DNA of 64,000 bases from Macrostomum lignano (lineage: Eukaryota): the NCBI GenBank assembly GCA_002269645.1, contig NIVC01003410.1:1-64000 (forward strand), given 5' to 3'. The notes below the pieces were generated by a model. The model did no database searches. It saw only the letters and a program-made list of their open reading frames with translations, and had not been told where the DNA came from. A program made the position numbers and the translations under genes. Each line of letters starts with the position of its first letter. Positions within the stretch are counted from its first letter, which is position 1. Shown here piece after piece: positions 55,298 to 63,119 of the stretch.

Positions 55298-56563
55298 TCA
55301 ATATCGAACGCCGTGGATTTTGTCCGCCAGCTTGAACAGTCCCTTGTTTGCCTCTTTCTTGAAGATTTTGTACGGAGCCTTCAGTACGGCGATCGCGACT
55401 CCTGCATGCAAATTTTTGGCATTCACTTGAGTTTTGAAATTTTACCTTTTACGTCTAACAGATGGCACCAGTGTCTAACAGCTGTGGTGTGTCTAACACC
55501 TGTGGTGTGTCTAACAGCTGTGGTGTGTCTAACATGCAGCTCTTATGTGTCTAACAGCTGTGGTGTGTCTAACAGCTGTGGTGTGTCTAACATGCAGCTG
55601 TGGTGTGTCTAACAGCTGTGGTGTGTCTAACAGCTGTGGTGTGTCTAACAGCTGTGGTGTGTCTAACAGCTGTGGTGTGTCTAACAGCTGTGGTGTGTCT
55701 AACAGCTGTGGTGTGTCTAACAGCTGTGGTGTGTCTAACACCTGTGGTGTGTCTAACAGCTGTGGTGTGTCTAACATGCAGCTGTGGTGTGTCTAACAGC
55801 TGTGGTGTGTCTAACACCTGTGGTGTGTCTAACAGCTGTGGTGCGTCTAACATGCAGCTCTTATGTGTCTAACAGCTGTGGTGTGTCTAACAGCTGTGGT
55901 GTGTCTAACAGCTGTGGTGTGTCTAACATGCAGCTGTGGTGTGTCTAACAGCTGTGGTGTGTCTAACAGCTGTGGTGTGTCTAACAGCTGTGGTGTGTCT
56001 AACAGCTGTGGTGTGTCTAACAGCTGTGGTGTGTCTAACATGCAGCTGTGGTGTGTCTAACAGCTGTGGTGTGTCTAACAGCTGTAATGTGTCTAACAGC
56101 TGTGGTGTGTCTAACAGCTGTGGTGTGTCTAACAGCTGTAATGTGTCTAACAGCTGTGGTGTGTCTAACAGCTGTGGTGTGTCTAACAGCTGTGGTGTGT
56201 CTAACAGCTGTGGTGTGTCTAACAGCTGTGGTGTGTCTAACGGCTGTAATGTGTCTAACAGCTGTGGTGTGTCTAACAGCTTTGGTGTGTCTAACAGCTG
56301 TAATGTGTCTAACATGCAGCTGTGGTGTGTCCAACAGCTGTGTGTCTAACAGATCAGATGTCTCTAACAGCTGACATCAGAGTCTAACACTTGAGATAGC
56401 TATCTAACAGCTAGCACTGGAGTCTACTTGCGTGCAAATCTGTGCAAATAAAATTTTGGCGACATCCAAAAAACTTACTCTTTGGGCATCCGTCAGCCAC
56501 TGAGGTGCTCATGATGACGAGACTAAGTGCTGCTATGATGAATAGAAACCGCCACATGCGCAT
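55298..56563 (-). CDS. Small secreted cationic peptide 1 (62 aa precursor; candidate host-defence peptide)
   Basis: Exon 1 56563-56479 MRMWRFLFIIAALSLVIMSTSVADGCPK (donor A|GTAAGT, phase 1). Exon 2 55401-55298 (acceptor ATGCAG) gives RVAIAVLKAPYKIFKKEANKGLFKLADKIHGVRY*. A 36-nt GTAAGT...TAGCAG candidate 5'UTR intron lies at 56616-56581. Confidence 0.8.
55470..56370. repeat. 18-bp minisatellite (CTGTGGTGTGTCTAACAG) in the intron of peptide gene 1
   Basis: About 48 copies with periodic ATGC-insertion variants. Confidence 0.97.
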
Positions 56564-56804
56564 GTCGATAGCGGGTTGAGCTGCTAAACTGCTCAATAGA
56601 CAGCAGGATGACTTACTTGTTATTAAAATGGCTTGCGATGGCTATAAAATAGATGCATCAATTGCGCATCATATTTTGTAAGAACGCATTCCCAAGTTCT
56701 CAGTAATTCGTTCCTTAAAAGAATAAGTAATCTAACATATGATTGCTGTATCTCTATGGTCCAACCAGTTAACTTACACTACTCGGTTTTAAAATAACTA
56801 ACTA

Positions 56805-56972
56805 ACTAACTAACTAACTAACTAACTAACTAACTAACTAACTAACTAACTAACTAACTAACTAACTAACTAACTAACTAACTAACTAACTAACTAACTA
56901 ACTAACTAACTAACTAACTAACTAACTAACTAACTAACTAACTAACTAAATAACTAACTAACAAACTAACAA
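56805..56972. repeat. (CTAA)n microsatellite between peptide genes 1 and 2
   Basis: Near-perfect tetranucleotide tandem. Confidence 0.98.
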
Positions 56973-59844: not shown

Positions 59845-61862
59845 TTTTGAGGTTGTGGAGTTTAGGGGTTGTGGAGTTTAGGGGTTGTGAAGTTTAGGGG
59901 TTATGTAGTTTAGGGGTTGTGTAGTTTAGGGGTTGTGTAGTTTAGGGGTTGTGTAGTTTAGTAGTTGTGTAGTTTAGGGGTTGTGTAGTTTAGGAGTTGT
60001 GGAGTTTAGAGGTTGTGTAGTTTAGGGGTTGTGTAGTTTAGGGGTTGTGTAGTTTAGGGGTTGTGTAGTTTAGGAGTTGTGTAGTTTAGGGGTTGTGGAG
60101 TTTAAGGGTTGTGTAGTTTAGAGGTTGTGTAGTTTAGGGGTTGTGTAGTTTAGGGGTTGTGTAGTTTAGGAGTTGTGTAGTTTAGGGGTTGTGTAGTTTA
60201 GGAGTTGTGGAGTTTAGGGGTTGTGAAGTTTAGGGGTTGTGGAGTTTAAGGGTTGTGAAGTTTAGGGGTTGTGTAGTTTAGGAGTTGTGGAGTTTAGGGT
60301 TTGTGAAGTTTAGGGGTTGTGTAGTTTAGGGGTTGTGGAGTTTAGGGGTTGTGTAGTTTGGGGTTTGTGAAGTTTAGGGGTTGTTGAGTTTAGGGGTTGT
60401 GGAGTTTAGGGGTTGTGTAGTTTAGGGGTTGTGTAGTTTAGGAGTTGTGTAGTTTAGGGGTTGTGTAGTTTAGGAGTTGTGGAGTTTAGAGGTTGTGTAG
60501 TTTAGGGGTTGTGTAGTTTAGGGGTTGTGTAGTTTAGGAGTTGTGTAGTTTAGGGGTTGTGGAGTTTAAGGGTTGTGTAGTTTAGAGGTTGTGTAGTTTA
60601 GGGGTTGTGTAGTTTAGGGGTTGTGTAGTTTAGGAGTTGTGTAGTTTAGGGGTTGTGTAGTTTAGGAGTTGTGGAGTTTAGGGTTTGTGAAGTTTAGGGG
60701 TTGTGGAGTTTAAGGGTTGTGAAGTTTAGGGGTTGTGAAGTTTAGGGGTTGTGGAGTTTAGGGTTTGTGAAGTTTAGGGGTTGTGTAGTTTAGGGGTTGT
60801 GGAGTTTAGGGGTTGTGTAGTTTGGGGTTTGTGAAGTTTAGGGGTTGTTGAGTTTAGGGGTTGTGGAGTTTAGGGGTTGTGTAGTTTAGGAGTTGTGTAG
60901 CTTAGGGGTTGTGTAGTTTAGGAGTTGTGTAGTTTAGGGGTTGTGTAGTTTAGGGGTTTTGTAGTTTAGGGGTTGTGTAGTTTAGAGGTTGTGTAGTTTA
61001 GGGGTTGTGTAGTTTAGGGGTTGTGTAGTTTAGGGGTTGTGTAGTTTAGGGGTTGTGTAGTTTAGGGTTTGTGAAGTTTAGGGGTTGTGTAATTTAGGGG
61101 TTGTGTAGTTTAGGGGTTGTGTAGTTTAGGAGTTGTGTAGTTTAGGGGTTGTGTAGTTTAGGAGTTGTGTAGTTTAGGGTTTGTGAAGTTTAGGGGTTGT
61201 GGAGTTTAAGGGTTGTGAAGTTTAGGGGTTGTGAAGTTTAGGGGTTGTGGAGTTTAGGGTTTGTGTAGTTTAGGGGTTGTGTAGTTTAGGGGTTTTGGAG
61301 TTTAGGGGTTGTGTAGTTTAGGGTTTGTGAAGTTTAGGGGTTGTGGAGTTTAGGGGTTGTGGAGTTTAGGAGTTGTGTAGTTTAGGAGTTGTGTAGTTTA
61401 GGGGTTGTGTAGTTTAGGAGTTGTGTAGCTTAGGGGTTGTGTAGTTTAGGGGTTGTGTAGTTTAGGGGTTGTGTAGTTTAGGGGTTGTGTAGTTTAGAGG
61501 TTGTGTAGTTTAGGGGTTGTGTAGTTTAGGGGTTGTGTAGTTTAGGAGTTGTGTAGTTTAGGGGTTGTGTAGTTTAGGGGTTGTGTAGTTTAGGGGTTGT
61601 GTAGTTTAGGGGTTGTGTAGTTTAGGGGTTGTGTAGTTTAGGGGTTGTGTAGTTTAGGGGTTGTGTAGTTTAGGAGTTGTGTAGTTTAGGGGTTTTGTAG
61701 TTTAGGGGTTGTGTAGTTTAGAGGTTGTGTAGTTTAGGGGCTGTGGAGTTTAGGGGTTGTGTAGTTTAGGGGTTGTGTAGTTTAGGGGTTGTGTAGTTTA
61801 GGGGTTGTGTAGTTTAGGGGTTGTGGAGTTTAGGGGTTGTGTAGTTTAGGAGTTGTGGAGTT
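59845..61862. repeat. 16-bp G-rich telomere-like minisatellite (TTTAGGGGTTGTGTAG)
   Basis: About 125 copies, intergenic between peptide genes 2 and 3. Confidence 0.97.
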
Positions 61863-62018
61863 CAGCAGTAGCTGAGGTCGCACACGTTCGCACTGATCAG
61901 CTGACCGCAACTACTCAAACAACCCAGTAGACGCTCGATGTCCAAAGGCTGTTGCCGAAGCAGCCGCAAAAGTGGAATAATAAAAACGCAGTGAACTCCA
62001 GTCTGCAAGGCTTTGTTC

Positions 62019-63119
62019 TCAATACTTGTAATTCGTACTTGACCTTGCTCTCAACAAAGCTTCCTGTGCTTTCAATTTTTTAGTTTGTTCCGGCAGTCGA
62101 TGAGACCTTCGGCGCATGTGCTTGTTAAAGATCTTTTTTGAGGCCTTAAATGGGCCCTTCATAATGAACTTAATCGCTTCTGCGGGTCAAGAATTGGGTA
62201 AGGAAAGTAAAGTGTCATTCTTTAATTAAAGATACTGTTTGTAAACAATTTTGTAAACACTACAAAAATACAAAATTCACGGCAATTTTCTAATTTTGGC
62301 GCTATCGAGACTCGTGATTTGATGCAATCTACATTTGGATTTGGCGCCATCTGCATTCGTGATTTGGCGCCATCTGCATTCGTGATTTGGCGCCTTCTAA
62401 GTTCATGATTTGGCGCCTTCTACATTTGTGATTTGGCGCATCTACATTTGTGATTTGGCGCCTTCTACATTCGTGATTTGGCGCCTTCTACATTCGTGAT
62501 CTGGCGCCATCTGCATTCGTGATTTGGTGCCAGCTGCATTCGTGATCTGGCGCCATCTGCATTCGTGATTTGGCGCCATCTACAATCGTGGTACGGCGCC
62601 ATCTGCATTCGTGATTTGGCGCCATCTACAATCGTGGTACGGCGCCATCTGCATTCGTGGAAGCCTCTTATGAAAAGCAACATTATGCCTAATATAATAA
62701 TAATAATTGATTACACCTGTCATATTGGGCCAGATGTGCAACCGACAGCTCAGCCGCAGCTATTGCGCGGCGCATCTGAAGGCTGCGTACGGCTGTTCAG
62801 TCCAAGGACTGGAAGGGGTCGCCACACACACCCTCAATTACCCCAGCTAATGCTGGCACCCATTTTACAGCTGGGGTGAACTGAAGCAATGCAGAGTTAA
62901 GTGTCTTGCTCAAGGACACAAATTGTTCCAGTGGGATCGGGAAACGAACCCCCGACCTTCAAGTCTTAACCACAAGGCTACAACCCCAGGCAAGGCAAGT
63001 GTTACAATTATGCTTTAAAAAAGCTTACTTGCAGGTGTGCAGCAATCGCCAGTCTGAATAAACTCTGAAAGCAGCAATAGAACACCAACCAGAAGCAGCG
63101 CTCTGGTCGCCAAATGCAT
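62019..63119 (-). CDS. Small secreted cationic peptide 3 (83 aa precursor)
   Basis: Exon 1 63119-63029 MHLATRALLLVGVLLLLSEFIQTGDCCTPA (donor A|GTAAGC, phase 1). Exon 2 62179-62019 (acceptor CCGCAG) gives KAIKFIMKGPFKASKKIFNKHMRRRSHRLPEQTKKLKAQEALLRARSSTNYKY*. Confidence 0.8.
62310..62660. repeat. 23-bp minisatellite (GATTTGGCGCCATCTGCATTCGT) in the intron of peptide gene 3
   Basis: About 14 copies. Confidence 0.93.
62690..62987 (-). mobile_element. tRNA-derived SINE with CORE/MIR-like central domain
   Basis: The minus strand starts GGGGTTGTAGCCTTGTGG (A box) and GGTTCGTTTCC (B box). The + strand reads CCCATTTTACAGCTGGGGTGAACTGAAGC...GTTAAGTGTCTTGCTCAAGGACAC, similar to the reversed MIR/CORE consensus as recalled. 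(TTA)n-type tail at 62690-62707. Confidence 0.7.

What the first reader, a model, noticed from the sequence alone, without database searches (positions are those of the whole stretch)
56479..63119. Single conserved Cys placed at the predicted mature N-terminus in all three peptides
Seen: signal regions end VADG|CPK, LGHG|CPI and TGDC|CTPA, and no other Cys occurs downstream in any of the three. Inference: an unpaired N-terminal Cys kept through otherwise heavy divergence suggests covalent homo/heterodimers between cluster members (as in the disulfide-linked frog peptide distinctin), lipidation, or metal binding. That would make the cluster a combinatorial system.
Basis: partly seen in the sequence, partly recalled or inferred. 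Interest (0 to 1): 0.7.

Follow-up and report, generated by a model that had tools for sequence, protein, structure and literature searches.

The report
Flatworm secreted peptides with N-terminal cysteine
Three neighbouring genes of the flatworm Macrostomum lignano (a fourth lies just outside the window) encode secreted, strongly positive helical peptides found in no other organism searched, and each keeps a single cysteine exactly where the signal peptide is predicted to be cut off, which most likely joins the peptides into pairs; this has not been tested.

Summary
The window is Macrostomum lignano contig NIVC01003410.1. The three "peptides" are two-exon genes on the minus strand. I call them A (83 aa, unannotated), B (141 aa, BOX15_Mlig007395g1) and C (62 aa, BOX15_Mlig011746g1). 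A fourth paralog, D (132 aa), lies just outside the window.

Exon 1 encodes the signal peptide and ends with an invariant Cys-Pro. A phase-1 intron follows. Exon 2 encodes a Lys-rich peptide (net +8 to +18) that starts with a 31-residue amphipathic helix.

A von Heijne weight matrix puts the best cleavage site directly before the conserved Cys in B, C and D by wide margins. In A that site is a near-tie for second place. The 312 mature residues hold no other Cys. All 12 copies in three duplicated loci keep Cys-Pro, with synonymous codon differences among paralogs.

No homolog was found outside M. lignano, and there is no Pfam or PDB match.

My best reading is secreted cationic helical peptides tethered at the N-terminus by an intermolecular disulfide, as in known dimeric antimicrobial peptides. 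The N-termini also fit the published sequence rules for Hedgehog-acyltransferase palmitoylation. Metal binding has no support. The peptides' function, their tissue of expression and the state of the Cys are all unknown.

The parts
63029..63119 (-). Gene A exon 1: signal peptide MHLATRALLLVGVLLLLSEFIQTGDC + CTPA, ending in phase 1 at a GTAAG donor. Cys26 is at 63044-63042, the conserved Cys27 at 63041-63039 and Pro29 at 63035-63033.
   Evidence: Not annotated in GenBank. Intact in all three duplicated loci.
62019..62179 (-). Gene A exon 2 (includes the stop). It encodes the remainder of the mature peptide; the whole mature chain (starting at Cys27 in exon 1) is 57 aa, net charge +15, pI 11.2.
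   Evidence: Acceptor is ...CCCGCAG|AA. No AATAAA or ATTAAA within 600 nt downstream of the stop.
62295..62659 (.). 23-bp x16 minisatellite inside the intron of gene A.
59118..59208 (-). Gene B exon 1: signal peptide MSTNLKHFIAVLTVLLTASQLVDLGHG + CPI. Cys28 is at 59127-59125 and Pro29 at 59124-59122.
   Evidence: Identical to P0001, BOX15_Mlig007395g1.
57438..57772 (-). Gene B exon 2 (includes the stop). It encodes the remainder of the mature peptide; the whole mature chain (starting at Cys28 in exon 1) is 114 aa, net charge +18, and ends ...AMGR.
   Evidence: AlphaFold2 predicts helices 30-60, 67-90 and 106-138 at low confidence.
57856..59043 (.). 20-bp x59 minisatellite inside the intron of gene B.
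56479..56563 (-). Gene C exon 1: signal peptide MRMWRFLFIIAALSLVIMSTSVADG + CPK. Cys26 is at 56488-56486 and Pro27 at 56485-56483.
   Evidence: Identical to P0003, BOX15_Mlig011746g1.
55298..55401 (-). Gene C exon 2 (includes the stop). The mature peptide is 37 aa, CPKRVAIAVLKAPYKIFKKEANKGLFKLADKIHGVRY, net charge +8.
   Evidence: AATAAA lies at 55086. The protein is identical in the three loci, with 0 nonsynonymous against 2-4 synonymous differences.
55471..56373 (.). 18-bp x49 minisatellite inside the intron of gene C.

Best explanation
This is a Macrostomum-restricted tandem family of four small genes in the order D-A-B-C, of which A, B and C are in the window.

Each gene makes a secreted peptide. 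Exon 1 encodes the signal peptide and ends with Cys-Pro. Signal peptidase cuts directly before that Cys (inferred). The mature product is Cys-Pro, then a roughly 31-residue Lys-rich amphipathic helix with a Gly/Pro hinge, then a tail of variable length.

Because each mature chain has exactly one Cys, and it sits at the very N-terminus, the most likely fate is an intermolecular disulfide. That would tether two helices in parallel at their N-termini, giving homodimers, and heterodimers if paralogs share a cell. I infer that the products act as membrane- or surface-active cationic peptides of the host-defence type.

Shown: gene structure, the invariant Cys-Pro, the lack of any other Cys, charge, amphipathic periodicity and the lack of homologs. 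Inferred: the cleavage site, dimerisation and function.
For: - **Gene models.** My spliced B and C equal the RNA-seq-based GenBank proteins. D is annotated too.
- **Cleavage.** A von Heijne 1986 weight matrix gives ADG|CPK 8.18 (next best 4.18), GHG|CPI 8.09 (next 5.72) and AEC|CPI 10.67 (next 5.12). In A, GDC|CTPA scores 6.05 against 6.42 for IQT|GDCC. The matrix columns all sum to 161, and 4 of 4 human control sites were reproduced.
- **Constraint on Cys-Pro.** It is invariant across paralogs that are 24-37% identical and in all 12 copies, with synonymous codon differences. C shows 0 nonsynonymous against 2-4 synonymous differences.
- **One Cys per chain.** There is no other Cys in 312 mature residues.
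- **Physical character.** Net charge is +8 to +18 and pI is 10-11.2. The amphipathic moment of the column-mean profile is 0.53 at 93 degrees, reached by 0 of 5000 shuffles. AlphaFold2 starts a helix at or just after the Pro that follows the Cys, at low confidence.
- **Established knowledge.** Unpaired luminal Cys residues are usually paired or capped before secretion. Natural disulfide-linked dimeric cationic peptides exist, including CAP11, dicynthaurin, distinctin, halocidin and the mouse CRS peptides (PMC2931633).
Against: - No experiment or expression data were found: five supplement searches for the gene IDs gave nothing.
- SignalP could not be run. In A the matrix slightly prefers a site three residues upstream, which would leave two adjacent Cys in the mature peptide.
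- Four paralogs are few, and they are not independent.
- AlphaFold2 confidence is low (pLDDT 57-60).
- The amphipathic period of 93 degrees is off the ideal 100 degrees.
- Gene A has no canonical poly(A) signal and is unannotated.
- A host-defence role is inferred from composition alone. Seminal-fluid, adhesive or other secretory roles fit equally well.
Confidence: 0.4

Rival explanations
1. The N-terminal Cys is lipidated rather than disulfide-bonded. After signal cleavage, a Hedgehog-acyltransferase (Hhat/Rasp) type MBOAT enzyme would attach palmitate by an amide bond to the Cys, as it does on Hedgehog and Drosophila Spitz. This would turn the cationic helices into membrane-anchored natural lipopeptides.
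For: The Resh review (PMC8061759) gives these rules for Hhat substrates:
- A free N-terminal Cys exposed by signal cleavage.
- The first six residues are sufficient.
- Residue 2 may be Gly, Ser, Ala, Pro or Gln, but not Lys.
- A basic residue must lie within the first seven.

The four N-termini are CPKRVAI, CPISLTK, CPIKIAK and CTPAKAI. All have a basic residue within the first seven, and three have Pro at position 2.
Against: The same review says that an N-terminal Cys alone is not sufficient. It also says that none of 87 human proteins predicted to have an N-terminal Cys, apart from the Hedgehogs, is a shown substrate. A has Thr at position 2, which is untested. I did not check for an Hhat ortholog in M. 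lignano or whether it is co-expressed. A palmitoylated peptide would tend to stay on the producing cell.
Confidence: 0.12
2. The Cys has no role in the finished product. Either Cys-Pro is kept because it makes a good signal-peptidase site and helix N-cap and the thiol stays free or capped, or the N-terminal stub is removed. Removal could be by an X-Pro dipeptidyl peptidase, or at the basic residues that follow (KR in C).
For: In the von Heijne counts, Pro at +2 is about three-fold enriched and Cys at +1 and -1 about two-fold. Cys-Pro is an X-Pro dipeptide of the kind trimmed from melittin and cecropin precursors (my own knowledge, not checked here). C has CPKR followed by V.
Against: Signal peptidase does not need Cys at +1: 8 of 161 sites have it. 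Many other residues would serve, yet Cys is invariant while its neighbours vary. The basic residues after Cys-Pro are not in one aligned column and are mostly single. A reads C-T-P-A, which is not an X-Pro start. Complete avoidance of Cys in the other 311 mature residues suggests the single thiol matters.
Confidence: 0.25
3. Signal peptidase cuts upstream of the Cys, for example SVA|DGCP, TAS|QLVD... or IQT|GDCC. The Cys would then be internal, within a short acidic N-terminal stub.
For: In A the upstream site scores slightly higher, 6.42 against 6.05. The c-regions implied by cleavage at the Cys are long in A and B, at 9 residues.
Against: In B, C and D the site before the Cys wins by 2.4-5.5 log units. 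Only that site has small residues at -3 and -1 in all four paralogs. The upstream alternatives are not conserved.
Confidence: 0.15

Closest known systems
Disulfide-linked dimeric cationic antimicrobial peptides (CAP11, dicynthaurin, distinctin, halocidin, homotarsinin)
   Same: Secreted, cationic, helical chains with exactly one Cys each. Covalent homo- or heterodimers raise activity, salt tolerance or protease resistance (PMC2931633; PMC5244374).
   Different: There is no sequence relationship. For the two known examples whose Cys position I read (CAP11 Cys41, halocidin Cys18), the Cys is internal or C-terminal, whereas here it is residue 1, directly at the signal cleavage site and followed by Pro. 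Two members here are long (104 and 114 aa). Dimerisation and activity are untested.
Mouse Paneth-cell CRS (cryptdin-related sequence) peptides
   Same: A gene family whose members form covalent homo- and heterodimers.
   Different: An unrelated fold and sequence. No evidence here of co-expression or of heterodimers.
Hedgehog and Spitz N-terminal palmitoylation by Hhat/Rasp
   Same: A Cys becomes residue 1 after signal cleavage. Residue 2 is of a tolerated type (Pro), and a basic residue lies within the first seven (PMC8061759).
   Different: These are not signalling-domain proteins. No acyl group has been shown, and the enzyme was not looked for in this genome.
Trematode helminth defence molecules (FhHDM-1, Sm16)
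   Same: Flatworm-lineage-restricted, secreted, small and mostly helical, with an amphipathic helix. Exon 1 encodes the signal peptide (PMC7373315).
   Different: No detectable homology: the exhaustive profile search returned only M. lignano proteins. HDM genes have four exons, against two here. The HDM amphipathic helix is C-terminal, whereas here it is N-terminal. HDMs are described as trematode-specific.

Membership tests
Disulfide-dimeric cationic helical host-defence peptides (a functional class, not a homologous family) | Signal peptide and secretion | tested here: met
   Weight-matrix scores are 6.05-10.7, above the 3.5 threshold as I recall it from EMBOSS sigcleave (not checked here). 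The n/h/c regions are typical. Controls reproduced 4 of 4 known sites.
Disulfide-dimeric cationic helical host-defence peptides (a functional class, not a homologous family) | Cationic amphipathic helix | tested here: met
   Net charge +8 to +18. Column-mean moment 0.53 at 93 degrees, reached by 0 of 5000 shuffles; single peptides are reached by 5-58 of 2000 shuffles. AlphaFold2 predicts helices at low pLDDT.
Disulfide-dimeric cationic helical host-defence peptides (a functional class, not a homologous family) | Exactly one Cys per mature chain | tested here: met
   One Cys in each of A, B, C and D if cleavage falls before the conserved Cys. A would have two under the alternative site.
Disulfide-dimeric cationic helical host-defence peptides (a functional class, not a homologous family) | Intermolecular disulfide present in the native product; antimicrobial activity | not testable with these tools
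   Needs non-reducing versus reducing mass spectrometry and activity assays.
Hhat/Rasp substrates | Free N-terminal Cys after signal cleavage | tested here: inconclusive
   Predicted as the top site in B, C and D and as second by 0.4 units in A. This is prediction only.
Hhat/Rasp substrates | Residue 2 of a tolerated type (Gly, Ser, Ala, Pro, Gln; not Lys) and a basic residue within the first seven | tested here: met
   CPKRVAI, CPISLTK and CPIKIAK comply. CTPAKAI has Thr at position 2, which the published tests do not cover. Rules are from PMC8061759.
Hhat/Rasp substrates | Hhat ortholog present and co-expressed; amide-linked palmitate on the peptide | not tested
Trematode helminth defence molecules (HDM/Sm16) | Detectable sequence homology to HDMs | tested here: not met
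   A profile search over 1.84 billion representative proteins returned only three M. lignano proteins. The word-index searches agree.
Trematode helminth defence molecules (HDM/Sm16) | Four-exon gene with a conserved C-terminal amphipathic helix | tested here: not met
   The genes here have two exons, and the amphipathic helix comes directly after the signal peptide. The HDM structure is from PMC7373315.
Cecropin or other curated peptide families (Pfam) | Match to a curated profile | tested here: not met
   A and C match no family at E<=1. B and D have only sub-threshold chance hits. The best PDB match has E=0.14.
Bacterial-type lipoprotein (lipobox) | L-[AS]-[GA]-C lipobox and Lgt/Lsp machinery | tested here: not met
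   Positions -3 to -1 read ADG, GHG, GDC and AEC, which do not fit a lipobox. The organism is an animal.

The most novel reading that the evidence does not exclude
The family is a new class of substrates for a Hedgehog-acyltransferase-type enzyme. The N-terminal Cys-Pro-x-basic motif would be N-palmitoylated in the ER, so the flatworm would make ribosomally encoded cationic lipopeptides. These would be the first non-Hedgehog, non-EGF-ligand substrates of this enzyme class, in an animal where transgenesis and RNAi are available.
Probability: 0.1. Interest if true: 0.75.

Novelty: new variant of a known kind. Interest (0 to 1): 0.42.

Why it matters
My two literature searches of the held paper library found no described host-defence or surface-active peptides for Macrostomum lignano. 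If these genes encode such peptides, they would be among the first for free-living flatworms.

The design is also unusual. The single cysteine sits at residue 1, created by signal cleavage itself. This gives a simple, testable route to covalent homo- or heterodimers, or to lipidation, from a four-gene cluster present in three genomic copies.

M. lignano has RNAi and transgenesis, so the role of the Cys could be tested directly. If the Cys proves to be only a cleavage-site preference, the family is just another lineage-restricted set of secreted peptides.

Tried and rejected
**Searches that found nothing**
- Homolog searches found only the M. lignano proteins themselves: three word-index searches and one exhaustive profile search. 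In one search the low-complexity tail of D swamped the candidate list.
- Pfam and PDB sequence search gave nothing significant.
- A full-text search for the gene IDs and supplement searches in five M. lignano papers gave nothing, so the tissue of expression stays unknown.
- A search for "Macrostomum lignano" plus "antimicrobial peptide" found no relevant study.
- No k-mer of 7 or more bases is shared by all four promoters, so co-regulation is neither supported nor excluded.
- A scan 10 kb upstream of D and across the whole window found no further members.

It was rerun with database proteins only.

**Ideas considered and rejected**
- Metal binding: there is no nearby His or Cys partner in the mature chain.
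- Bacterial-type lipobox: wrong residues and wrong kingdom.
- A splicing constraint as the cause of Cys-Pro conservation: the codons differ synonymously and lie 7-10 nt from the donor.
- A conserved dibasic propeptide site: the basic residues are not in one aligned column.
- A gene-conversion tract from the window copy as the cause of the exon-2 differences in gene A: private and shared sites are interleaved.

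
Full report
**What the region is**

The window is a eukaryotic sequence rich in minisatellites. The three "peptides" are the first exons of three genes on the minus strand. Each exon 1 is an ATG followed by 28-30 codons, and each ends in phase 1 at a GTAAG donor. Each joins a second exon behind a ...CAG acceptor, 850-1350 bp downstream.

The spliced products are:
- **A:** 83 aa, 63119..63029 + 62179..62019.
- **B:** 141 aa, 59208..59118 + 57772..57438.
- **C:** 62 aa, 56563..56479 + 55401..55298.

A protein search identified the organism. [quoted passage not shown] The window equals contig NIVC01003410.1 of assembly GCA_002269645.1, position for position. 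That annotation was built from a genome-guided RNA-seq transcriptome, and transcripts overlapping repeats were removed (PMC5730564). So the exon-intron structures of B and C rest on transcripts. Gene A is not annotated.

**The family**

A fourth paralog, D (132 aa, BOX15_Mlig027090g1), lies just upstream, outside the window at record positions about 65.4-67.0 kb. The array D-A-B-C is head to tail. It occurs in three duplicated loci of this redundant assembly (its duplicated blocks are described), and there are no further members within 10 kb. All twelve copies are intact.

Paralogs are only 24-37% identical. The invariant positions are the start Met, Cys-Pro at the end of exon 1, and two Lys.

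Profile searches found nothing outside M. lignano. This includes a search of 1.84 billion representative proteins and three word-index searches of 5.8 billion proteins. There is no Pfam family and no PDB relative.

**Checking the observation**

After splicing, no Cys occurs in the 312 residues downstream of the conserved one in A, B, C and D. The signal peptides of A and D do contain extra Cys, so Cys is avoided specifically in the mature parts.

The conserved Cys codon is TGC or TGT and the Pro codon is CCA, CCC or CCT. They lie 7-10 nt from the donor. Conservation is therefore at the protein level and is not a splice-signal effect.

**Where the signal peptide is cut**

SignalP was not available, so I implemented the von Heijne (1986) eukaryotic weight matrix from memory. 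All 15 columns sum to the expected 161, and it reproduces 4 of 4 known human cleavage sites.

| Gene | Site before the conserved Cys | Score | Best other site | Score |
|---|---|---|---|---|
| C | ADG\|CPK | 8.18 | STS\|VADG | 4.18 |
| B | GHG\|CPI | 8.09 | ASQ\|LVDL | 5.72 |
| D | AEC\|CPI | 10.67 | CCP\|IKIA | 5.12 |
| A | GDC\|CTPA | 6.05 | IQT\|GDCC | 6.42 |

The site before the Cys is the only one with small residues at -3 (A/G) and -1 (G/C) in all four paralogs. I take cleavage before the Cys as likely, at about two in three overall. It remains a prediction.

**The mature peptides**

Net charges are +8 (C, 37 aa), +15 (A, 57 aa), +18 (B, 114 aa) and +12 (D, 104 aa), and pI is 10-11.2.

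The 31 residues after Cys-Pro can be aligned without gaps. Their mean hydrophobicity profile has a sharp periodicity at 93 degrees (moment 0.53), reached by 0 of 5000 column shuffles. Each peptide alone reaches 0.53-0.55, matched by 5-58 of 2000 shuffles. Lys occupies the polar face and Ile, Val, Leu, Ala and Phe the apolar face. A Gly/Pro-containing stretch in the middle looks like a hinge.

AlphaFold2, with only four sequences, is of low confidence (pLDDT 57-60). It does predict a helix starting at or just after the Pro that follows the Cys. B and D carry long Ala/Lys/Glu-rich helical tails. B ends in Gly-Arg and D in Gly, which are possible amidation signals (inference).

**Selection**

C has 0 nonsynonymous against 2-4 synonymous differences among the three loci. 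For B, pN/pS is 0.3-0.6, and for A it is 0.56-1.2. All counts are small.

**How it most likely works**

A secreted chain with one Cys normally leaves the cell either paired or capped (established knowledge of ER thiol quality control). Natural cationic peptides that dimerise through a single cystine are known: CAP11, dicynthaurin, distinctin and halocidin. Dimerisation improves their activity, LPS binding or protease resistance. The mouse CRS peptides form covalent homo- and heterodimers, which has been read as a way to diversify defence peptides (PMC2931633).

My best explanation, at confidence 0.4, is therefore an N-terminal disulfide tether between two parallel amphipathic helices. A host-defence-like or surface-active role is possible.

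The main novel rival is N-palmitoylation. The published rules for Hhat substrates are a free N-terminal Cys, residue 2 that may be Pro but not Lys, and a basic residue within the first seven (PMC8061759). CPKRVAI, CPISLTK and CPIKIAK meet them. CTPAKAI nearly does, since Thr at position 2 is untested. The same review warns that an N-terminal Cys alone is not sufficient.

Less interesting rivals are that the Cys only serves the cleavage site and helix cap, that it is trimmed off, or that cleavage lies upstream.

**Comparison with known families**

In kind, the family resembles disulfide-dimeric antimicrobial peptides. Within flatworms it resembles the trematode helminth defence molecules. It is not a detectable member of either. 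HDM genes have four exons and a C-terminal amphipathic helix (PMC7373315), and no homology was found.

Placing the single Cys at residue 1, created by signal cleavage and followed by Pro, differs from the dimeric peptides whose Cys position I read (CAP11 Cys41, halocidin Cys18). I rate the finding a new variant of a known kind.

**Limits**

No expression site, native mass or activity is known. The literature and supplement searches for the gene IDs found nothing. Gene A may be weakly expressed or not expressed at all. It has no canonical poly(A) signal within 600 nt, and its 3' end runs into a 2-kb minisatellite. Conservation rests on four paralogs and their recent duplicates only.

Noticed in passing
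L001 4613-5983 against L003 (gene A region; window counterpart 62019-63300): Between two duplicated loci, the only substitutions in about 1370 bp (promoter-proximal region, exon 1, intron, exon 2 and 3' flank) are five inside the 161-nt exon 2, and four of them are nonsynonymous. Four are private to L001 within 28 nt and are interleaved with sites that L001 shares with L003, so this is not a simple conversion from the window copy. It could be diversifying selection, conversion from an unseen copy, or a clustered mutation.
   Followed up: partly
window 55471-56373, 57856-59043, 62295-62659; also 59851-61862, 56795-56970, 63619-64000: Each of the three family introns holds a different minisatellite: 18 bp x49, 20 bp x59 and 23 bp x16. 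The intergenic spacers hold others: 16 bp x126, (TAAC)44 and a 19-bp unit. Intron length differs among the duplicated loci, 755-1514 bp.
   Followed up: no
window 61862-62019: Gene A has no AATAAA or ATTAAA within 600 nt after its stop, and a 2-kb minisatellite begins 157 nt downstream. The GenBank annotation excluded transcripts overlapping repeats, and this may be why A is unannotated.
   Followed up: partly
record NIVC01003410.1, about 65390-67002, minus strand (outside the window; L004 10001-11613): This is the fourth family member, D (132 aa, BOX15_Mlig027090g1). Its exon 1 ends ...RCAECCPI, and it has a long Ala/Lys/Glu-rich helical tail ending in Gly.
   Followed up: yes
window 15401-18664 (-) and 18836-19810 (-): An intronless 1087-aa ORF carries ankyrin repeats and an ion-transport domain, which is TRP-channel-like. 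It is preceded by a 324-aa ORF made of repeats of the same N-terminal unit of about 70 aa.
   Followed up: no
window 3907-4689 (+) and 5899-6687 (+): Two tandem paralogous single-exon ORFs of 260 and 262 aa, each with a signal-like N-terminus. Pfam gives only a weak PAN_4 hit.
   Followed up: no
window about 45382-52285 (-) and 53522-54157 (-): A multi-exon M16 peptidase gene lies directly downstream of gene C in all three loci. An RNase H-like ORF, probably a retroelement fragment (judged from the translation only; no domain search was run), lies between them.
   Followed up: no
P0003 (gene C product): UniRef names this 62-aa peptide 'NTR domain-containing protein'. No Pfam domain supports that name, so it looks like a mislabel.
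   Followed up: partly
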